Source: Octopus sinensis (taxonomy: Eukaryota). From it: a DNA stretch of 64,000 nt. Positions 2,279 through 54,379 of the stretch are shown piece by piece; within the stretch, counting starts at the first letter, position 1; each line of letters starts with the position of its first letter. Both the position numbers and the translations under genes were made by a program. Location of the stretch: contig NC_043020.1 of the NCBI RefSeq assembly GCF_006345805.1, positions 10,974,001 to 11,038,000 on the forward strand. The letters are read 5' to 3'. The notes under the pieces were generated by a model, which saw only the letters and a list, made by a program, of their open reading frames with translations, did no database searches and had not been told where the DNA came from.

Positions 2279-2652
2279 TTAGTTTAACCTGCTCATATAC
2301 AAAAAGCTAGAGGGCTTATTGGGGCTGATGAATTTTGCCTGGTTCATCCTCAAAAATACTGCGTCATTAACTGTAAGTTTGTATCTAAATGATAATTGTA
2401 TCATGGCATGTTCCGTTATGTTTAAAGAACTTGAACTTTTCTTCATGAACACATAATCTTTTTCACTATTCTTTCTCTCCAACATTATGGTTGTAACTGC
2501 TGGTGGAGCACCAACTGGAATATGTAATTGCACTGCACAAGTTATTTGGTAAATCCCATCTTGAGGTATAACAATGTAACTGCCATTAATCAGTTTGATG
2601 TTGCCTAGATCCTGGCTCTCATCTTTTATCCACTGTAAATTAGTCGGTCCAT
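2279..2652 (-). CDS. TNF-like gene A exon 4 (TNF homology domain, 374 nt to stop)
   Basis: tttttcag|ATGGACCG acceptor (phase 1); [35 protein letters not shown]...[10 protein letters not shown]; by hand alignment about half of the residues are identical to gene B exon 4. Confidence 0.9.
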
Positions 2653-5600
2653 CTGAAAAATAAATAATAATAGTAATAATAATAATCCACTCTAAATAAT
2701 CCATCTGAAAAAGAAATAATAATAGTAATAATAATAATCCACTGTAAATAATCCATATGAAAAAGAAATAATAATAGTAATAATAATAATCCACTGTAAA
2801 TAATCCATCTGAAAAAGAAATAATAATAGTAATAATAATAATCCACTGTAAATAATCCATCTGAAAAAGGAATAATAATAGTAATAATAATAATCCACTG
2901 TAAATAATCCATCCGAAAAAGAAATAATAATAGTAATAATAATAATCCACTGTAAATAATCCATCTGAAAAAGAAATAATAATAGTAATAATAATAATCC
3001 ACTGTAAATAATCCATCTGAAAAAAAATAATAATAGTAATAATAATAATCCACTGTAAATAATCCATCTGAAAAAGAAATAATAATAGTAATAATAATAA
3101 TCCACTGTAAATAATCCATCTGAAAAAGAAATAATAATAGTAATAATAATAATCCACTGTAAATAATCCATCTGAAAAAGAAATAATAATAGTAATAATA
3201 ATAATCCACTGTAAATAATCCATCTGAAAAAGAAATAATAATAGTAATAATAATAATCCACTGTAAATAATCCATCCGAAAAAGAAATAATAATAGTAAT
3301 AATAATAATCCACTGTAAATAATCCATATGAAAAAGAAATAATAATAGTAATAATAATAATCCACTGTAAATAATCCATCTGAAAAAGAAATAATAATAG
3401 TAATAATAATAATCCACTGTAAATAATCCATCCGAAAAAGAAATAATAATAGTAATAATAATAATCCACTGTAAATAATCCATCTGAAAAAGAAATAATA
3501 ATAATAGTAATAATAATAATCCACTGTAAATAATCCATCTGAAAAAGGAATAATAATAGTAATAATAATAATCCACTGTAAATAATCCATCCGAAAAAGA
3601 AATAATAATAGTAATAATAATAATCCACTGTAAATAATCCATCTGAAAAAGAAATAATAATAGTAATAATAATAATCCACTGTAAATAATCCATCTGAAA
3701 AAAAATAATAATAGTAATAATAATAATCCACTGTAAATAATCCATCTGAAAAAGAAATAATAATAGTAATAATAATAATCCACTGTAAATAATCCATCTG
3801 AAAAAGAAATAATAATAGTAATAATAATAATCCACTGTAAATAATCCATCTGAAAAAGAAATAATAATAGTAATAATAATAATCCACTGTAAATAATCCA
3901 TCTGAAAAAGAAATAATAATAGTAATAATAATAATCCACTGTAAATAATCCATCTGAAAAAGGAATAATAATAGTAATAATAATAATCCACTCTAAATAA
4001 TCCATCTGAAAAAGAAATAATAATAGTAATAATAATAATCCACTCTAAATAATCCATCTGAAAAAGAAATAATAATAGTAATAATAATAATCCACTGTAA
4101 ATAATCCGTCCGAAAAAGAAATAATAATAGTAATAATAATAGTCCACTGTAAATAATCCATCTGAAAAATAAATAATAATAGTAATAATAATAATCCACT
4201 GTAAATAATCCATCTGAAAAAGAAATAATAATAGTAATAATAATAATCCACTGTAAATAATCCATCCGAAAAAGAAATAATAATAGTAATAATAATAATC
4301 CACTGTAAATAATCCATATGAAAAAGAAATAATAATAGTAATAATAATAATCCACAGTAAATAATCCATCTGAAAAAGAAATAATAATAGTAATAATAAT
4401 AATCCACTGTAAATAATCCATCTGAAAAAGAAATAATAATAGTAATAATAATAATCCACTGTAAATAATCCATCCGAAAAAGAAATAATAATAGTAATAA
4501 TAATAATCCACTGTAAATAATCCATATGAAAAAGAAATAATAATAGTAATAATAATAATCCACAGTAAATAATCCATCTGAAAAAGAAATAATAATAGTA
4601 ATAATAATAATCCACTGTAAATAATCCATCTGAAAAAGAAATAATAATAGTAATAATAATAGTCCACTGTAAATAATCCATCTGAAAAAGAAATAATAAT
4701 AGTAATAATAATAATCCACTGTAAATAATCCATCCGAAAAAGAAATAATAATAGTAATAATAATAATCCACTGTAAATAATCCATATGAAAAATAAATAA
4801 TAATAGTAATAATAATAATCCACTGTAAATAATCCATCTGAAAAAGAAATAATAATAGTAATAATAATAATCCACTGTAAATAATCCATCTGAAAAAGAA
4901 ATAATAATAGTAATAATAATAATCCACTGTAAATAATCCATATGAAAAATAAATAATAATAGTAATAATAATAATCCACTGTAAATAATCCATCTGAAAA
5001 AGAAATAATAATAGTAATAATAATAATCCACTGTAAATAATCCATCCGAAAAAGAAATAATAATAGTAATAATAATAATCCACTGTAAATAATCCATCTG
5101 AAAAAGAAATAATAATAATAGTAATAATAATAGTAGTAATAATAATAACAATAATAATAATAATAATAATAATAATTGCTTTTATTTGCCAAGGATAAGG
5201 GGGACAATACAAAGACAGACATAATGTTCTGGGGTTTAGATATAACAAAATAATAAACAAAAAAAAAAGAAAGCATACATGGTATATAATAAAACAAAGG
5301 TAAGTACACTTAGTATGCAACAGTAAATAGAAAGTAGAAGGGTAAGAAATGGATGATGATGGGGTCTTCCTGATACAGGAGGACCTCTAGGGATAATTGA
5401 GAAAACCCAAGGCAAGAACACTCTCCAATACCTACTTTCCAGCTCACAGGTCTATACGTAGTGGTACCATCCACTCTTGCCATTTTCACAATTTTCATCC
5501 ACCTTTCAATAGATTCACTCAAGGACAGCACCTCCCTCTCTATCCTCACTTTCCTTTTCAAGGTAAAACTTGAAAAAGTCAATAGGGGCTCTACCAAGGT

Positions 5601-8600
5601 CTCTGTCCTCATACCTTTCAGCCCTGTCCATCATACAACTGCTTTTGCAATCACCCACAAACAAAGGAAAACTGCCTCCCCTGCAGTAAAGCAAGGTGGT
5701 GGGCCAATCATCACTATGGATTTGATTGATAGACAGATCCATCCCACATGTAACAACAGTGGAGGCACATGGCCTAGTGGTTAGAGCAGTGGTCTCGCAG
5801 TCAAGGGATCGTAGGTTATCATTCAGCTAGTGTTAGAAACATAAATTGTGACTAAGGTTTGGTGGAAGATTTTAATTCAAAACTTATGAAAACAAGACAT
5901 TTGTACTACAGAGCTAGAGGCAGTTTCAGCCGGGTTGGTAACAAAAGGGTTAAGGGGATAATTCAACTTATGAGAAAAAGCGTGCAATAAATCTGTATAA
6001 ATCAGCTTACCTAACTCAGTGTAACCCCTTGTTTTTAGGAGAAAGAAGGCATGTTGAACTGAAAGATAAGAAGAGAGAAAGCAGACAGTGAGAAGGATAT
6101 ATTTGAATACAGGTTCAATATCTGGCAGAAGACTAAAACCAGAAAGGACATTTCTTGATGTATTTCATATATTTAATATTTCAGATTATCATCTAATAAA
6201 TAACTATACAACATATCAACTGTTTCACAATTATTATTATCATAATTAAAATGATCTACATAGACAACAATTATTAACCATTAATGAAAGAGAGCCAAGA
6301 CTTTATAAATATCTATATATTACACCCATCACTTGTAGTTTCATGAGCTTTAATATGGTCAGTTGTATAGAAGCGATGCTTTGCTGGGACTCATCCTCCT
6401 CATCATCATCATCATTTAATGTCCACTTTCCATGCTAGCATGGGTTGGACGATTTGACTGAGGTCTGGCGAACCAGACTCCGATCTGATCTGGCAGTGTT
6501 TCTACAGCTGGATGCCCTTCCCAACGCCAACCACTCCGAGAGTGTAGTGGGTGCTTTTACGTGCCACCGGCACAAGGGCCTGTTTGGCGATACTGGCAAC
6601 GGCCATGACCAAATGGTGCTTTTTACGTGCCACCTGCACAGGAGCCAGTCCAGTGGCACTGGTGACGACCTCGCTCGAATGTTTCACATGCCACCAGCAC
6701 AGGTGCTAGTAAGGTGACTCAGTAACGATCACGCTCGAATGATGTGCATAAATGTGCCAAGTTTAGTACAATTCTAGTAAACATGTACAGGAGGCTTCAT
6801 CCTATCAAAGTGTCATCTAAAGCCATGGTCCAGTTAATCCTTGTAGACATTTCATTCAAATATTTAATGATGTGGGTATTTTTACTATTTATTTCTTTAG
6901 TATGTCTGATATTTTTCAAGTTGCCTATCTTAAGACTGTAATGTATTGAGGACATGTTTAGTCCCCAAAGTCCATCCCCTCCTCACCGTGGCAGGGACGC
7001 TGGCAACGGGTAGTGTCATAGCTATGCTGTCGGGAACTTCAGTTCCTGGTAGGGCCACCCGAGGCGGATTGGTCTGACACCTAGTGGTATTAGGGCCACA
7101 ACCCAGCGGTGAAAATCGTCGGAGTGTCTGTTTCGGCAACCGGCGGCTTCTCGGTCGTTCTGTCCCTGCGCCTGCGGACAATCTGCGGCAAACAGGATGT
7201 CTCTACATGCGGGATAGTGTCATAGCTATGCTGTCGGGAACTTCAGTTCCTGGTAGGGCCACCCGAGGCAGATTGGTCTGACACCTAGTGGTATTAGGGC
7301 CACAACCCAGCGGTGAAAATCGTCGGAGTGTCTGTTTCGGCAACCGGCGGCTTCTCGGTCGTTCTGTCCCTGCGTCTGCGGACAATCTGCGGCAAACAGG
7401 ATGTCTCTACATGCGGGATTGTTGGGGACCGCTTGTGAAATTCATATTCCCACGAAACTTCTTCCACTGCCATGGTTCGAGATGCCTCGAGGGTGGTAGA
7501 AGAAGCCGACTCAACCCGCCCAGGGTGAATGTCGCCACAAGTACAAGTAAGTAAGTAAGTATGTTTAGTGATTTAACGTTACAATATGTTATGGTGTCAG
7601 AGGATTTTATAGACACATGGATGGTGTAATGGTGACAACATATATACTTACATAGTGGAGGAGCTGGTAGAGGATACTGCCGCTAAAGTAGAAAGATAAG
7701 GAAATGAGAAAAGGACAATTAAGACGGTAATTGGTGTTGTTTATATTACTTTCATCATATTACTCCCTCCTTTACAATTTGTCAGTCTTGTTACAGTCTT
7801 GTCACAGTCTTGGTACGGACCTGATACACTTGTTACAGCATTGTTATTCTCCAGTAACTCACTTGTTATACTCCAATTACTTTTGTCTTACACTTGATAC
7901 ACCATTGTAACATTCCTGTTAGTATTTGTTTCTTGTTACATAGTCTGCCATTACATTCATGTTACAAACATGTTACATGTATTATTACTGTTACATACAT
8001 TATTGCTATGTAGCTGTACTATTAATCTTGTTATACTCACAACTGTCAGCTTACTCTTGAGATGGTTGATCAGTGGAGACATAGATTTTATTCATAATGA
8101 CTTCTACAGGATCTGATTATTATCTGTTTCTTTACTACCCACAAGGGGCTAAACACAGAGGGGACAAACAAGGACAGACAAACGGATTAAGCCAATTGTA
8201 TCGACCCCAGTGCGTAACTGCTACTTATTTAATCGACCCCAAAAGGATGAAAGGCAAAGTCAACCTCGGCAGAATTTGAACTCAGAACGTAGCAATGAGT
8301 TCAAATTCCGCCGAGGTCGACTTTGCTTTCCATCCTTTCGGGGGTCGATATAATCGACTTAATACGGTTGTCTGTCCTTGTTTGTCCCCTCTGTGTTTAG
8401 TCCCTTGTGGGTTGATCATTGGAGACATAGATTTTATTCATAATGACTTCTACAGGATCTGATTATTATCTGTTTCTTTATTACCCACAAGGGGCTAAAC
8501 ATAGAAGGGACAAACAAGGACAGACACACGGATTAAGTCGATTCTATCGACCTCAGTGCGTAACTGGTATTTAATTTATCGACCCCAAAAGGATGAAAGG

Positions 8601-12070: not shown

Positions 12071-14139
12071 GCATATATGAGTACAGGACACCACAAATAA
12101 ACGTAGAACACAACGAGAAACGAAAACATAAAATCAAACAAGGAAACGGACTTTTTTTAACAACAAAAAAAACAGAGTACAAGACAAACAATACAAGGAA
12201 TATTCCCCTTCATCAGCAGCCCTTGGTTCGACTCAATGTGTATATATATATATATATACATACATATATATACATCTATATGTGTGTTTGTGTGTCTGTG
12301 TTTGTCCCCCACCCACCCAACATCGCTTGACAACCGATGCTGGTGTGTTTACGTCCCCGTAACTTAGCGGTTCGGCAAAATAGACCGATAGAATAAGTAC
12401 TAGGCTTACAAAGAATAGGTCCTGGGGTCGATTTTCTCAACTAAAGGAGGTGCTCCAGCATGGCCGCAGTCAAATGATTGAAACAAGTAAAAGAGTAAGA
12501 GAGTATTTATCCAGGTTTTAACATTTCTTTTGAAATAGTCACTTTGCGGAGCAATACACCGTTCCCGTCGTCCTTGCCACTTTTGGAATCCGACCTGGAT
12601 TCAAGCAAGTCAAGGACCTACTGAATTCCCTCTGGATCTCAACAAAGGTGTTAAAACAATGACCCCTGAGCGTCATTTTCATCTTGGGGAAGATGGACGT
12701 CCGCAGGTGCTAAATCTGGCAAATAGGGCAGGTGTAGATGTGATGCTATGTTGTTTTGAGAAAGAAACACATGAATGAGGAGAACTTGGTGAAGAATCCA
12801 ATTCTTCGTGCTTCACAGACTCGGTTGCTTTCAACAAATGTCCTCTCTCAAATGCTTCAAAATGTTACAGTAGAACTCTTGATTAAGGGCTGGCCCTAGG
12901 GGGCAAATTCTCGATGCACAATATATTTTCGAAGGTGATGCTTATGGCAAGTCTTCCAAATTACTCATCGTCTTCCAAGGACACTCTTCCACTTTTGAAA
13001 CACTTGTGCCACTTAAAACATTGCATACGACTCACTGCCTCATTGCTGTAAGCTTGCCAAAGCATGCTCAATATTTTTCTAACAGGCGAGCTGGCAGAAA
13101 CGCTAGCACGCCGGGCGAAATGCGTTGCCGTATTTCGTCTGCCGTTACGTTCCGAGTTCAAATTCCGCCGAGGTCGACTTTGCCTTTCATCCTTCCGGGG
13201 TCGATAAATTAAGTACCAGCTACGCACTGGGGTCGATGTAATCGACTTAATCCCTTTGTCTGTCCTTGTTTGTCTCCTCTGTGTTTAGCCCCTTGTGGGT
13301 AGTAAGGAAATAAATATTTCTCTAACAGACTCCCCAAGTTTAGCACAAAATTTCATGTTGGCTCTTTGTTCCTGTCCATGACAAAATCGCAAACTACACC
13401 ATACATGTAATCACAAAACCGCAAATTTCACAACTTTAGAAGTAAACACAGCACTCACTTAGCGCAGTACCTCATGAAGGTCACTGCTGGCTCACACTGT
13501 GCATATAACTGTGTACTTCCACCCGTTGGCACAGTACAGAACTAGTCTGAGAACCTTTTGATACCACTTTGTATAGAATATAAAGAAAGTCAAGAGGTAG
13601 ATGCATATATTTATTTCACCAGTTCATATCCGTAGGACGACGGTTATTTTGCAGTCAACCTCAAACAAAAATAATCTATTTTAGTGTAGATTATTTTATG
13701 CGCAACTCCATTGTCTCCCGAGACAAAAAGGATGTCAACAACCCCAGTATAGCCCCACTTTTCTCCCAAGTTGGGAGACAATACCGGCCACTTTGGGAAC
13801 CACTGGTGGAGATTATATCAGAATTTGATGTTAAAAAAAAAGAAAAGAAAAGAAAAAAATTATGGGTTACAGTTTGTAAATAGAAATGTGATATGTAGAT
13901 GTGTGCGCTCAACGATTTGTTTTTGACATTAAATTCTGCTTAGTTTAAAATTTACACCATCTGAAATACCGACATTTGGGCGATTAACGAAAGATCGTCT
14001 ATATTTCTAGAAAAAAAAATTAATTTCAATATCTATTTTTCTGATAATTATGAAAAAACAAAGTGAGCGAGTGGGGGAGGGGCAGAGTTTGTTGACAGAC
14101 ACACAAATACTCAAGTACATACACGCATAGATAGGAAGG

Positions 14140-14505: not shown

Positions 14506-15087
14506 AAATAAAACTTTAAGGTTTACCTGAGATAGGACAATAGCAATAATCGCCAGTGTTATCGCAACAATGAGAAGAATAATAGAGATTAGAAAATATT
14601 TTAAGAGAGACTGCTGGGATTTAGTTTTGCTTGATGGTACCTGGGGTTGCAATGAAGGTGTTGATTTAGGACTGTTTTGTTCGATGTCGACTGCTCTACT
14701 TCCTGGTTTGAAAATTACTTTAGCTTTTCCTTCTTGAATTAAACATTCAGCTTCAGGTTTATTGTCATCGGTTAATGACAATTTTGGTGGTAGATCTTTA
14801 CTGTCTTCATCAATTTGAACATGGGTGTCAGTTTCCTTGTGTTTTGGTGTGTCTTGTTCGTTGTCCTCACTGCAGGCTTGGCTAGCAGCTCCTTCCACGT
14901 CTCCGTCGAAACACGGTGATTGTTCTTCTTGAGCAGGCGATGGCATAGCATCACGCTCAGTTATTACATTAGACTCAGGTATTACATTAGGATAGGGTTT
15001 TGCATCAGGATCTGGTACTGCACCAGTATCTGGTATTGCACCAGTATCTGGTATTGCATCAGGATCTGCGGGTATAATAGTGGGCAT
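2279..15087 (-). CDS. TNF-superfamily ligand gene A (type II membrane protein, 4 coding exons, 337 aa): join complement(15087-14527, 7682-7652, 6058-6011, 2652-2279)
   Basis: All junctions are GT-AG, phases 0,1,1, and the frame stays open (561+31+48+374=1014 nt). Architecture: acidic N-tail, TM, Pro-rich stalk, TNF homology domain (AFFLL...NLQW...[17 protein letters not shown], cf. human TNF QLQW...LVVPSEGLYLIYSQV). The paralog at 37693-54379 has the same structure. Extra in-frame exons in intron 1 cannot be excluded. Confidence 0.85.
2653..5105 (-). repeat. 52-bp minisatellite, about 47 copies, made of the exon-4 splice acceptor plus the exon start
   Basis: Sense unit: tattattattactattattatttctttttcag|atggattatttacagtggat. 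True exon start: cag|ATGGACCGACTAATTTACAGTGGAT. Confidence 0.95.
5177..5760 (-). mobile_element. 3' end of an L1/Tx1-like non-LTR retrotransposon
   Basis: Frameshifted [36 protein letters not shown]-terminus, then a 3' UTR with AATAAA (5181-5186) running into (ATT)n. The clade call is from memory of such C-termini. Confidence 0.5.
6011..6058 (-). CDS. TNF-like gene A exon 3 (48 nt, [16 protein letters not shown]; first THD strand)
   Basis: cttatctttcag acceptor, TTAG|GTAAGC donor, phase 1 to 1; same length as and homologous to 43475-43522. Confidence 0.85.
6400..6745 (-). mobile_element. Short element or truncated copy sharing the RTE 3' end, (TGA)n tail
   Basis: Matches the reverse complement of 19300-19670. 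Further copies at 19970-20125, 25605-25960, 37185-37517, 56925-57245 and 59705-60285. Confidence 0.8.
6963..7560 (+). mobile_element. GC-rich SINE-like retroposon with (AAGT)n tail and a 201-bp internal tandem duplication
   Basis: 9-bp TSD atgtttagt (6954-6962 and 7561-7569); absent at the homologous position in gene B (~45920); second copy at 59011-59388. Confidence 0.8.
7652..7682 (-). CDS. TNF-like gene A exon 2 (31-nt micro-exon, [10 protein letters not shown])
   Basis: Long polypyrimidine tract plus ctactttag acceptor; donor CTAT|GTAAGT; phase 0 to 1 as required; flanks homologous to gene B exon 2. Confidence 0.8.
8065..9000. repeat. Palindromic, tandemly duplicated array of tRNA-derived SINE family S2
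   Basis: Head-to-head S2 halves meet at ~8297 and ~8640; a ~346-bp unit is duplicated (8065 and 8410); the flank is also inverted (8456 vs ~8961-9000). Confidence 0.85.
9081..10570. repeat. Tandem repeat, 8 copies, unit 134-141 bp with 211- and 420-bp long variants
   Basis: gtgacacc anchor at 9081, 9501, 9635, 9769, 9909, 10120, 10260 and 10401. Confidence 0.9.
11262..11548 (+). mobile_element. tRNA-derived SINE (family S3)
   Basis: A box tggcctagtggttagg, B box ggtttcgattccc; same head as the reverse copy at 21640-22027. Confidence 0.75.
11749..12503 (+). mobile_element. SINE family S1 with an expanded internal (TA)n
   Basis: S1 head at 11749-11900 and tail at 12290-12503. Confidence 0.8.
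12530..13083 (-). pseudogene. Degenerate mariner transposase fragment
   Basis: [31 protein letters not shown] (mariner HTH region), followed by degenerate catalytic and C-terminal residues ([16 protein letters not shown]); many stops. Confidence 0.75.
13085..13312 (+). mobile_element. tRNA-derived SINE family S2
   Basis: ggcgagctggcagaaacg head, gagttcaaattcc B box, gggtagtaa tail. Other single copies at 23935-24152(-), 27913-28143(+), 43195-43427(+) and 61258-61425(+). Confidence 0.85.
14128..14505. repeat. (GATA)n/(GACA)n microsatellite about 20 nt inside gene A intron 1
   Basis: Direct reading. Confidence 0.95.
14527..15087 (-). CDS. TNF-like gene A exon 1 (187 aa: cytoplasmic tail plus [24 protein letters not shown])
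   Basis: ATG at 15087 with an in-frame TGA 3 nt upstream; non-repetitive ORF; hydrophobic helix ends at CAG|GTAAAC donor (phase 0); (TCTA)n microsatellite follows. Confidence 0.85.
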
Positions 15088-21100: not shown

Positions 21101-21523
21101 ATATTACTTTCAAAATATTAATTCCAAATAGAATGGATATAATATGTTTTATTGACCAAACTTATCATACAGGCACAGGTGTAGCCGTGTGGTTAAGCAG
21201 CTTGCTTTGCAACATGGTCTCATGTTCGGTCCCTCTACACTGCATTTTGAACATACATCTAATTTTTTTTTCTTGAAGCACTCCGTCGGTTATGACGACC
21301 GATAGAATAAGTACTGGGCTTACAAAGAATAAGTCCTATGGTCGATTTGCTCGACTAAAAGCGGTGCTCCAGCATGGCCGCAGTCAAATGACTGAAACAA
21401 GTAAAAGAGTAAAAGAGTATACATACATATAAAGGTGACAATAATATGATGAAAGTAATAAAAGCATCAGTCACCATGTTGTGTTAATTTTCCTTTTCTC
21501 ACCTTCTTTTCTTTCTGTTTTAG

Positions 21524-21554
21524 AAGGACAATAAGCAACAGCCACCTCCACGAT
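21524..21554 (+). pseudogene. Orphan inverted paralog of TNF exon 2 (31 nt, KDNKQQPPPR) with about 200 bp of homologous intron flank (21435-21637)
   Basis: ttctgttttag acceptor and CGAT|GTAAGT donor, phase 0 to 1. Upstream taatatgatgaaagtaata is identical to gene A intron 1; downstream ccatgtctcaataaaa...atattgtaac matches intron 2 of A and B. No partner exons found. Confidence 0.7.
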
Positions 21555-21639
21555 GTAAGTTACTTCCACCGTTCCACCTTCCATGTCTCAATAAAATTAT
21601 CTTGACTCTGTAATATATTGTAACATTAATGAAATCACT

Positions 21640-30074: not shown

Positions 30075-30730
30075 CCCTTTAGCATTTAGACCGGCCATAT
30101 CCGGCCAAAAGTATTCTGCTTGTTTTATGTTCAAACTGGCCAGATCTGGTCTTTCACACCAACCCTACAATATCGTTTTAAAACTTAACATCTGCCTCAT
30201 CAAATTCTCATAGTTACAAGATAATGCATTTAAACTGGCCATATCCGGCCAAAAGTATTCTGCCTGTTTTATGTTCAAACTGGCCAGATCTGGTCTTTCA
30301 CACCAACCCTACAATATCGTTTTAAAACTTAACATCTGCCTCATCAAATTCTCATAGTTACAAGATAATGCATTTAAACTGGCCATATCCGGCCAAAAGT
30401 ATTCTGCCTGTTTTATGTTCAAACTGACCAGATCTGGTCTCTCACACCAACCCTACAATACCGTTTTAAAAATTAACATCTGCCTCATCAAATTCTCATA
30501 GTTACAAGATAATGCATTTAAACTGGCCATATCTGGCCAAAAATATTCTGCCTGTTTTATGTTCAAACTGGCCAGATCTGGTCTTTCACACCAACCCTAC
30601 AAAACCTTTTTAAAAATTAACAGCTACCTCATCAAATTCTCATAGTTACAAGATAATGCATGATTATAGTTCAAAACAATGTGGATAAAAAAAGGATTAA
30701 TTTTGGCAGAATAATGCGAACACTAAAGGG
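30075..30730. mobile_element. piggyBac-type MITE with an internal 144-bp repeat x4
   Basis: TTAA on both sides; termini CCCTTTAG/CTAAAGGG; ggccatatc anchor at 30093, 30237, 30381 and 30525. Confidence 0.85.

Positions 30731-37692: not shown

Positions 37693-54379
<16,687 letters not shown>

What the first reader, a model, noticed from the sequence alone, without database searches (positions are those of the whole stretch)
2279..5105. The splice acceptor of a TNF-domain exon is amplified into ~47 tandem copies: a candidate splice-site array
Seen: the 52-bp unit is the intron end (tattatttctttttcag) plus the first ~20 nt of exon 4 (ATGGA..TTATTTACAGTGGAT vs the real ATGGACCGACTAATTTACAGTGGAT). 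Gene B has only (ATT)n at this spot, so the amplification is specific to gene A. The sense unit has no stop in any frame and 52 is not a multiple of 3. About a third of the acceptors (those reading FSDG) are therefore in frame and would add variable numbers of very hydrophobic Tyr/Ile/Leu/Phe repeats into the TNF domain, between its first strand (exon 3) and the rest. The others frameshift. About 15 units have lost the AG itself (CAG to CGG or CAT), and a ~678-bp higher-order duplication is visible. Inference: the array could be a decoy sink, a copy-number rheostat on functional ligand output, an isoform generator, or a neutral expansion that the spliceosome skips.
Basis: partly seen in the sequence, partly recalled or inferred. 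Interest (0 to 1): 0.85.

Follow-up and report, generated by a model that had tools for sequence, protein, structure and literature searches.

The report
Splice-acceptor minisatellite in octopus TNF gene
An octopus TNF-like cytokine gene carries 47 tandem copies of the junction between its last intron and last exon; this is a real "mirage"-type minisatellite, a kind already known from lancelets, most likely a neutral by-product, and whether the extra splice sites are used is untested.

Summary
A 52-bp unit is repeated 47 times at 2653-5105. It lies inside intron 3 of an intact four-exon TNF-superfamily ligand gene on the minus strand. The genome belongs to the Octopus vulgaris complex. Each unit holds part of an (ATT)n tract, the polypyrimidine tract with CAG, and a 20-nt copy of the start of exon 4.

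Of the 47 extra acceptors, 32 keep the AG and 10 of those are in frame. Fifteen have lost the AG (9 CGG, 6 CAT). By sequence the copies are as good as the authentic acceptor at 2652.

Five related junctions in O. vulgaris and O. bimaculoides are single-copy. Three of them end in (ATT)n or (TTA)n, so the array is lineage-specific and derived from the exon.

The class is already known: "mirage" minisatellites in lancelet genes, and the human F7 and ABCA7 intronic VNTRs that carry donor sites. In the lancelet and F7 cases the duplicated sites stay silent.

My best reading (about 0.6) is a young, neutral or mildly harmful expansion seeded by the microsatellite, with productive splicing at 2652. 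No transcript data could be reached, so a decoy or rheostat effect (about 0.25) remains open. Interest is moderate.

The parts
2279..2652 (-). Exon 4 of gene A (last exon). It codes for most of the TNF homology domain; the stop codon is at 2279-2281.
   Evidence: Translation gives GPTNLQW...SRLN*. Pfam TNF scores 27.7 bits. tblastn finds paralogues.
2653..2654 (-). AG of the authentic acceptor of intron 3 (tttatttttcag|ATGGACCGAC).
   Evidence: Sequence. It is the only acceptor that joins exon 3 in phase 1 to the conserved TNLQW frame without an insertion.
2653..5105 (-). 47-unit, 52-bp minisatellite. Each unit holds a pseudo-acceptor and a 20-nt copy of the exon-4 start.
   Evidence: TRF, unit alignment, acceptor table, pattern count.
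2819..3954 (-). Higher-order duplication: 2819-3276 is exactly repeated at 3497-3954 (offset 678 bp, 13 units).
   Evidence: Offset scan.
4171..4661 (-). Four-unit (208-bp) higher-order repeat: 4171-4453 equals 4379-4661 exactly. It carries the adjacent CAT and CGG dead-acceptor units.
5108..5176 (-). Flanking (ATT)23 microsatellite at the 5' edge of the array (gene sense). It is the presumed ancestral tract that seeded the duplication.
   Evidence: TRF, sequence. The same tract precedes the acceptor in three related genes and a degenerate ATT-rich stretch in a fourth.
5177..6010 (-). Remaining unique part of intron 3. The donor G|gtaagc has its first intron base at 6010.
   Evidence: Sequence.
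6011..6058 (-). Exon 3 (48 nt, coding [15 protein letters not shown], first beta-strand). It ends in phase 1.
   Evidence: The junction type is confirmed in a spliced Logan RNA contig of a gene-B-like relative. The strand position comes from the model.
7652..7682 (-). Exon 2 (31 nt, coding [10 protein letters not shown] plus one base).
   Evidence: Homology to the O. bimaculoides exon-2 region and canonical ag/gt sites.
14527..15087 (-). Exon 1 coding part, with the transmembrane segment [25 protein letters not shown].
   Evidence: ORF and donor.
37693..38066 (-). Gene B exon 4. This paralogue is the comparator and has a single-copy junction.
38078..38533 (-). Gene B (ATT)146 microsatellite, directly upstream of its exon-4 acceptor.
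   Evidence: TRF, sequence. The O. vulgaris locus has 150.7 copies and O. bimaculoides has 11.

Best explanation
This is a young, lineage-specific 'mirage'-type minisatellite with no adaptive function.

Inferred origin: the 3' end of intron 3 in this TNF-ligand family ends in an unstable (ATT)n tract. A segment of about 57 bp was duplicated in tandem. It ran from inside that tract, through the polypyrimidine tract and CAG, to 25 nt into exon 4. One upstream copy then lost 5 nt, giving the 52-bp unit. That copy was amplified to 47 units by slippage or unequal exchange, which left higher-order blocks of 4 and 13 units.

Shown: the whole array lies inside intron 3. The only junction that gives an uninterrupted TNF domain is exon 3 (donor 6011) joined to the last acceptor (2652).

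Inferred consequence: the 32 AG-bearing upstream copies are pseudo-acceptors and the spliceosome mostly ignores them. Each is followed by U-rich, intron-like sequence. The purine-rich exon body (GATAAAAGATGAGAGCCAGGA) follows only the real site. Any use of the copies gives frameshifted products or products with hydrophobic insertions, so the array is neutral to mildly harmful.
For: Structure and derivation:
- Array structure.
- Direction of derivation: the exon-start motif ACTAATTT(A/G)CA(G/C)TGG, coding TNL(Q/H)W, is conserved in the close paralogues. Every other junction seen is single-copy. These are gene B in the window, gene B in O. vulgaris, O. bimaculoides gene B and gene C, the O. vulgaris P0003 gene and a further O. 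vulgaris paralogue.
- O. bimaculoides gene C is collinear with gene A across exons 2-4. Its intron 3 is 455 bp with one acceptor.
- All 47 units share the 5-nt deletion. The real exon copy does not, as expected for an edge copy that is excluded from homogenisation. The same pattern is described for lancelet mirages (PMC3087553).

These intron ends are prone to expansion:
- Gene B's ATT tract has 146-151 copies here against 11 in O. bimaculoides.
- The O. vulgaris P0003 gene has an unrelated 20-bp x30 minisatellite just upstream of its exon-3 acceptor. Gene A has that 20-mer once.

[quoted passage not shown] The F7 pseudo-donors are functional but silent (PMC1557585).

Gene A is intact, with canonical splice sites and a 337-aa open frame.
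Against: No transcript evidence exists for gene A in either direction.

Nothing on the intron side favours the real acceptor. Positions -25 to +5 are identical except one base. Typical copies have a slightly better pyrimidine tract and a yUnAy motif at -41 that the real site's unit has lost. The array RNA is less structured than shuffled controls (z = +2.6), so structural masking is not supported.

The two commonest variants in the array both destroy the AG: 15 of roughly 30-37 variant cells fall on 2 of 52 positions. This hints at selection against live copies, which would mean they are used to some extent. That signal is weak. It represents only 2 of about 10 distinct variant types (P about 0.05-0.1 by my binomial estimate), and the two variants were co-amplified in one 4-unit block.

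The silent pseudo-donors of F7 lie downstream of the authentic donor. Here the copies lie upstream of the authentic acceptor and are transcribed first.
Confidence: 0.6

Rival explanations
1. Decoy sink or copy-number rheostat. The live pseudo-acceptors capture a real share of splicing. That share depends on the number and position of live units, so array length sets the output of functional ligand. Such an effect could be merely harmful or could be exploited.
For: There are 32 sequence-complete acceptor modules, equal to or slightly better than the real one. They are unstructured and transcribed before the real site. The AG is the most frequently mutated position in the array, as expected if live copies are costly. 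In ABCA7, an intronic VNTR that starts at a donor shows use of a unit's donor and length-dependent exon skipping (PMC5954066).
Against: Lancelet mirages and the F7 VNTR leave normal splicing intact (PMC3087553, PMC3902484, PMC1557585). No transcript data are available here. The AG-loss enrichment can be explained by amplification of a single 4-unit block.
Confidence: 0.25
2. Isoform generator. The in-frame array acceptors produce ligand variants carrying 52 to 815 extra hydrophobic residues between strand A and the rest of the TNF domain.
For: The exon-4 frame is open across the entire array, and 10 live acceptors are in frame, including the first one at 5097.
Against: The inserted peptide (for example [52 protein letters not shown]) is a by-product of translating ATT-rich DNA. 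(ATT)n has no stop in any frame, so the openness is expected. The insertion would fall inside the jelly-roll between its first and second strands and would very probably prevent folding. No database protein carries such a repeat, although that search was swamped by low-complexity candidates.
Confidence: 0.03
3. Assembly artefact. The array, or its copy number, was produced by mis-assembly of a shorter repeat.
For: Tandem arrays are prone to assembly error. A lancelet mirage was reported as mis-assembled in a draft genome (PMC3087553). No raw reads or second assembly of this interval could be examined.
Against: The array carries structured internal variation: 10 or so variant types, nested 4-unit and 13-unit blocks, and two unit-length variants. 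It sits between unique flanks and the window has no N. At 2.45 kb it is easily spanned by long reads. Neighbouring repeats agree closely with an independent O. vulgaris assembly: (ATT)146 against 150.7.
Confidence: 0.05
4. Gene A is a decaying or silent paralogue, so the array is tolerated because the gene is no longer under selection.
For: Gene A's exon 4 is only 64-65% identical to its closest relatives, whereas gene B is 87% identical to its O. bimaculoides orthologue. No annotated or transcript-derived protein close to gene A was found. The cluster shows mosaic and relic pieces.
Against: All four exons are open and all splice sites are canonical. The Pfam TNF score is above the cutoff and the invariant family residues are kept.
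Confidence: 0.1

Closest known systems
Lancelet (amphioxus) 'mirage' minisatellites: Adh3, globin BflGb6/BflGb9, troponin C, PGBD5
   Same: They are tandem, minisatellite-like duplications whose unit spans an intron-exon boundary and carries AG or GT signals. The BflGb6 unit is also the 3' end of an intron plus the 5' part of the next exon. Some units have lost the splice signal. They show concerted evolution, with the edge copy excluded from homogenisation (PMC3087553, PMC3902484).
   Different: They have so far been described in cephalochordates; this one is in a cephalopod. The globin cases have 3-6 units of 150-160 bp, against 47 units of 52 bp here. Normal splicing was checked by RT-PCR in lancelets but not here.
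Human F7 intron-7 37-bp VNTR
   Same: The first unit spans the exon-intron boundary, so the authentic site is accompanied by identical pseudo-sites inside the intron. It has served as a natural model of splice-site choice (PMC1557585).
   Different: It duplicates the donor, not the acceptor, and has 5-9 copies. Its pseudo-sites lie downstream of the authentic site, so a 5'-to-3' scan reaches the real one first. Here the copies lie upstream of the real acceptor.
Human ABCA7 intron-18 25-bp VNTR
   Same: It is an intronic VNTR that begins at a splice site. One unit's site is sometimes used, causing a frameshift, and VNTR length correlates with aberrant splicing (PMC5954066). This is the precedent for a rheostat-like effect.
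   Different: It is on the donor side and its unit is unrelated. The effect there is disease-associated, not shown to be adaptive.
Polymorphic (TG)m(T)n tract at the CFTR intron-8 acceptor (from my own knowledge, not checked here)
   Same: A simple repeat directly upstream of an acceptor whose length modulates exon inclusion. It is relevant to the (ATT)n tracts of gene B and of the ancestor of gene A.
   Different: It is a microsatellite within a single acceptor and does not duplicate the acceptor itself.

Membership tests
Mirage minisatellite (tandem repeat spanning an exon-intron boundary) | Head-to-tail tandem repeat of minisatellite unit size | tested here: met
   52 bp x 47.8 copies, 97% matches.
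Mirage minisatellite (tandem repeat spanning an exon-intron boundary) | Unit contains the splice signal plus adjacent exon sequence of the host gene | tested here: met
   The unit holds the polypyrimidine tract, the CAG and a 20-nt copy of the exon-4 start. The exon motif is conserved in the close paralogues, so the unit derives from the exon.
Mirage minisatellite (tandem repeat spanning an exon-intron boundary) | Authentic boundary sits at the edge of the array and escapes homogenisation | tested here: met
   The real copy alone keeps CCGAC; all 47 units share the 5-nt deletion.
Mirage minisatellite (tandem repeat spanning an exon-intron boundary) | Regular splicing is not disturbed by the duplicated sites | not testable with these tools
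   No gene A transcript was found in the protein collection.
Mirage minisatellite (tandem repeat spanning an exon-intron boundary) | Length instability or polymorphism | not testable with these tools
   Higher-order blocks imply unequal exchange. The orthologous interval of the O. vulgaris assembly could not be fetched.
TNF superfamily ligand | TNF homology domain by sequence profile | tested here: met
   PF00229 scores 27.7 bits against a cutoff of 23, E = 3e-06.
TNF superfamily ligand | Jelly-roll fold matching solved TNF-family structures | tested here: met
   Tested on P0004, the O. vulgaris orthologue of gene B (55% identical to gene A's exon 4). The model has pLDDT 70.8 overall and 85-93 across most of the domain. 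Top PDB matches are TNF-alpha, RANKL, TL1A, TRAIL, CD40L, APRIL and Eiger, with probability 1.00 and target TM-scores mostly 0.7-0.83. Gene A itself was not modelled.
TNF superfamily ligand | Type II membrane topology (N-terminal cytoplasmic tail, one transmembrane helix, C-terminal domain) | tested here: met
   Exon 1 encodes a hydrophobic segment of about 25 residues upstream of the domain. The P0004 model has a helix at residues 48-70.
TNF superfamily ligand | Trimer formation and receptor binding | not testable with these tools
   Needs experiment.
Splice-site-bearing VNTR with a shown splicing effect (F7, ABCA7 type) | Array starts at the authentic splice site and repeats it nearly identically | tested here: met
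   Positions -25 to +5 are identical except one base. It is an acceptor here, a donor in the human cases.
Splice-site-bearing VNTR with a shown splicing effect (F7, ABCA7 type) | Measured use or silence of the pseudo-sites, and copy-number polymorphism | not testable with these tools
   No RNA or population data are available.
NAGNAG or other short-distance tandem acceptors | Alternative AGs a few nucleotides apart sharing one branch point and pyrimidine tract | tested here: not met
   Acceptors are 52 nt apart and each has its own tract.
Tandem arrays of alternative exons (Dscam type) | Each unit is a complete exon with an acceptor and a donor | tested here: not met
   By inspection of the consensus, the unit's only GT (ACA|GTGGAT) matches the donor consensus poorly and would define a 14-nt exon.

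The most novel reading that the evidence does not exclude
The array is a polymorphic VNTR whose live acceptors take a copy-number-dependent share of splicing, so array length tunes the output of an octopus TNF-like cytokine. The equally informative opposite is that the spliceosome reliably passes over 32 intact, equal-strength upstream acceptors. That would give a natural 3'-splice-site counterpart of the F7 donor model and show that exon context alone decides acceptor choice.
Probability: 0.2. Interest if true: 0.7.

Novelty: new member of a known kind. Interest (0 to 1): 0.4.

Why it matters
If the array is as assembled, one pre-mRNA offers 33 near-identical AG acceptors. Only the last gives a working cytokine, and nothing on the intron side marks it out. 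That makes it a ready-made test of how a 3' splice site is chosen among equals: exon context against order of transcription against branch-point scanning. It is the acceptor-side counterpart of the F7 donor VNTR. It also extends 'mirage' minisatellites from lancelets to a mollusc, and shows the 3' intron ends of this immune gene cluster to be hotspots of repeat expansion. If, as is most likely, the copies are ignored, the locus is an ordinary intronic VNTR of local interest and a warning for gene annotation. The open frame across the array gives a spurious 1013-aa ORF.

Tried and rejected
Steps that led nowhere:
1. Fetching the orthologous array interval from another assembly. Gene B's O. vulgaris locus (L003) ends about 8.5 kb short of gene A. 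P0001 and P0006 are not on record.
2. A composite query (exon 1 + exon 3 + array peptide + exon 4), meant to catch annotated or transcript proteins that splice into the array. It was swamped by low-complexity candidates and returned only P0003.
3. An exact-match scan of metagenome contigs for the unit: 0 hits.
4. A candidate exon 2 at 12860-12892. I rejected it because the phase was wrong and it lacked a proper donor. The real exon 2 was found at 7652-7682.
5. A tRNA scan of intron 3: nothing found.

Readings considered and rejected:
- Masking of the copies by RNA structure. The array folds less well than shuffled controls.
- The exon start deriving from a dispersed repeat. The unit occurs nowhere else in the window and the exon motif is conserved in the close paralogues.
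- NAGNAG-type acceptors and Dscam-type exon arrays (see the membership test).
- The AG-loss enrichment as proof of selection. I treat it as suggestive only, because the two variants were co-amplified in one block.
Full report
**What is there.** Tandem Repeats Finder reports one outstanding array at 2648..5131: period 52, 47.8 copies, 97% matches, score 4703. A 32-nt core of the unit occurs 47 times in the window. All copies are on the minus strand inside the array, and none is expected by chance. In gene sense (minus strand) the consensus unit is ATGGATTATTTACAGTGGAT-TATTATTATTACTATTATTATT-TCTTTTTCAG. The array ends exactly at the acceptor of an exon that begins ATGGACCGACTAATTTACAGTGGATAAAAG. 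So each unit is the end of the intron (ATT tract, pyrimidine tract, CAG) joined to a 20-nt copy of the exon start. That copy differs from the real start by a 5-nt deletion (CCGAC) and one substitution. A (ATT)23 microsatellite at 5108-5176 flanks the array on its upstream side.

**The host gene.** The exon at 2279-2652 translates to [11 protein letters not shown]...SRLN*. Together with the 48-nt exon at 6011-6058 ([15 protein letters not shown]) it matches Pfam TNF (PF00229) at 27.7 bits against a cutoff of 23.

- I completed the model with exon 1 (15087-14527, containing a transmembrane segment) and exon 2 (7682-7652).
- All splice sites are canonical and the product is an open 337-aa type II protein.
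- Exon 4 carries the stop codon, so it is the last coding exon. An ATTAAA lies about 410 nt downstream.

For the fold I modelled P0004, the O. vulgaris orthologue of the neighbouring paralogue gene B. The model has pLDDT 85-93 across most of the domain. Its best PDB matches are TNF-alpha, RANKL, TL1A, TRAIL, CD40L, APRIL and Eiger, with probability 1.00 and target TM-scores mostly 0.7-0.83.

**Source.** Window 23622-64000 is collinear with O. vulgaris chromosome OX597837.1 (29.79-29.84 Mb, locus L003) at 96-99% identity. Gene B differs at 2 of 223 residues from XP_029650509.1. The window therefore comes from the Octopus vulgaris species complex, but not from that assembly.

**Counts.** There are 48 acceptor positions: 47 in the array plus the real one.

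| Dinucleotide | Count |
|---|---|
| AG | 33 (including the real acceptor) |
| GG | 9 |
| AT | 6 |

- Because 52 = 3 x 17 + 1, the frame rotates from unit to unit. Fifteen array positions are in frame with exon 4 and 10 of these keep the AG: 5097, 4629, 4161, 4005, 3849, 3642, 3483, 3171, 2964 and 2808.
- The consensus unit has no stop in any sense frame. The whole array has three stops, all from one C-to-G variant, and none is in the exon-4 frame. This produces a spurious 1013-aa ORF at 2279..5320.
- The openness is expected. (ATT)n has no stop in any frame, and only about 30 nt of each unit is other sequence.
- Higher-order structure is real: 458 bp repeated exactly at offset 678 (13 units) and 283 bp repeated exactly at offset 208 (4 units).

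**Direction and age.** The exon-start motif ACTAATTT(A/G)CA(G/C)TGG, coding TNL(Q/H)W, is conserved in the close paralogues, and the junction is single-copy in every relative I could read.

| Relative | Junction |
|---|---|
| Gene B in the window | (ATT)146, then ttcttttttcag |
| Gene B in O. vulgaris | (TTA)150.7 |
| Gene B in O. bimaculoides | (ATT)11 |
| O. bimaculoides gene C (collinear with gene A over exons 2-4) | intron 3 of 455 bp, one acceptor, only a degenerate ATT-rich stretch |
| O. vulgaris P0003 gene (closest protein relative of gene A, 64%) | (TTA)10 |
| Further O. vulgaris paralogue | no ATT tract |

The array therefore derives from the exon boundary and not the reverse, and it is specific to gene A in this lineage. 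All 47 units share the 5-nt deletion and the real copy does not. So one mutated upstream duplicate was amplified, and the functional edge copy stayed outside homogenisation. The original duplicate would have been 57 bp.

**Are the copies credible acceptors?** By sequence, yes.

- From -25 to +5 the commonest unit differs from the real site at one base, and the unit has the pyrimidine there.
- Typical copies have 16/20 pyrimidines in the tract, a 38-nt zone free of AG, and a yUnAy match (TTTAC) at -41. The real site has 15/20, and its unit reads TTTAG at that place.
- The array RNA folds less well than shuffled controls (z = +2.6), so masking by structure is not supported.

The only distinguishing feature is downstream. 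The real site is followed by purine-rich exon sequence, and the copies are followed by U-rich, intron-like sequence. That difference is shown by the sequence; that it is what the spliceosome uses to tell the sites apart is my inference.

**A hint of selection.** The AG is by far the most variable place in the unit: 9 A-to-G and 6 G-to-T changes, against at most 7 changes at any other column. About half of all variant cells fall on 2 of 52 positions. This would fit selection against live copies. However, the changes represent two mutational events among roughly ten variant types (P about 0.05-0.1 by my binomial estimate). The two dead units sit side by side in a 4-unit block that was amplified as a whole. 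I treat this as suggestive only.

**What is known.** This kind of object has a name.

- Lancelet Adh3, globin BflGb6/BflGb9, troponin C and PGBD5 genes carry 'mirages'. [quoted passage not shown] Some units keep AG or GT and some have lost them. RT-PCR indicates that regular splicing is not disturbed (PMC3087553, PMC3902484).
- Human F7 intron 7 has a 37-bp VNTR whose first unit spans the donor. The 5-9 identical pseudo-donors are functional in constructs but silent in vivo (PMC1557585).
- The human ABCA7 intron-18 VNTR starts at a donor. One unit's donor is sometimes used, and VNTR length correlates with exon skipping (PMC5954066).

The octopus array is the acceptor-side version, in a new phylum, with an unusually high copy number. 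One geometric difference matters: the copies lie upstream of the real site and are transcribed first.

**Verdict on mechanism.** The most likely reading (0.6) is a neutral to mildly harmful expansion seeded by the unstable ATT tract, with productive splicing at 2652.

Other evidence supports a mutational origin. The same gene family shows large changes in the ATT tract (11 against about 150 copies). An independent 20-bp x30 minisatellite sits just upstream of the exon-3 acceptor of the O. vulgaris P0003 gene, where gene A has the 20-mer once.

A real decoy or rheostat effect (0.25) cannot be excluded and is the interesting alternative. A functional isoform generator is very unlikely (0.03), because the inserted peptides are translated ATT-rich DNA placed inside the jelly-roll. 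A pure assembly artefact is unlikely (0.05), given the structured internal variation and the agreement of neighbouring repeats with an independent assembly.

Junction-dependent NMD is therefore not expected to remove the aberrant forms (established knowledge; invertebrate NMD rules are less well known).

**Limits.** No transcript of gene A, and no second copy of this interval, could be reached. The steps that would decide the question are listed separately.

Noticed in passing
window 37693-54379 (gene B); L003; L001: The (ATT)n tract directly upstream of gene B's exon-4 acceptor has 146 copies in the window and 150.7 in the O. vulgaris assembly, but only 11 in O. bimaculoides. About 450 nt of pure AUU repeat sits where a branch point would normally be.
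   Followed up: partly
L002 21041-21641 (O. vulgaris P0003 gene); window about 6104-6123: A 20-bp unit (TGAACCTGTATTCAAATATA) about 30 nt upstream of the exon-3 acceptor is amplified to 30 copies in the O. vulgaris P0003 gene. It is single-copy at the same place in gene A. This is a second, independent minisatellite at a 3' intron end in this family.
   Followed up: partly
window 49661-50303 and 51377-52897; L003 15.1-28.5 kb: Each of these window segments matches four places about 5 kb apart in the O. vulgaris locus. A segment of about 5 kb in gene B's intron 1 is therefore present four times in that assembly and once in the window. The gene range is 33.6 kb there, against a coding span of 16.7 kb in the window.
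   Followed up: no
window 30082-30661; L003 46252-47119: A 144-bp tandem repeat has 4.0 copies in the window and 6.0 in the O. vulgaris assembly. This shows copy-number differences in repeats between the two genomes.
   Followed up: no
window 21418-21639: This fragment is 87.8% identical to the exon-2 region of O. bimaculoides gene C. That is closer than gene A's own exon-2 region (69%). It may be a relic of a lost paralogue between genes B and A.
   Followed up: no
window 5950-6960; L002 39020-39678 and 37198-37572: Exon 3 and its flanks in gene A are about 85% identical to a further O. vulgaris paralogue whose exon 4 is only 41% identical at protein level. This suggests mosaic evolution (gene conversion or exon exchange) within a TNF-ligand cluster of at least four genes spanning about 170 kb.
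   Followed up: partly
window 14956-15068 (gene A exon 1): An 18-bp coding tandem repeat (AIPDTG-like hexapeptides) lies in the cytoplasmic tail. Gene A's tail is much longer than that of gene B.
   Followed up: no
window 2279-5320: A 1013-aa ORF runs through the array into exon 4. Automatic gene callers could mistake it for a real protein.
   Followed up: yes
P0006 (O. vulgaris annotation of gene B): An annotated 168-aa 'hypothetical predicted protein' leaves gene B's exon 4 after ...NVGNIQ and continues into unrelated sequence. It is either an alternative internal donor or a mis-annotation.
   Followed up: no
L004 (Logan SRR16213285 contig, 1277 nt): A spliced RNA contig from another octopus species encodes a full 225-aa gene-B-like ligand. 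It confirms the family's exon 3/4 junction and shows that the gene is expressed.
   Followed up: partly
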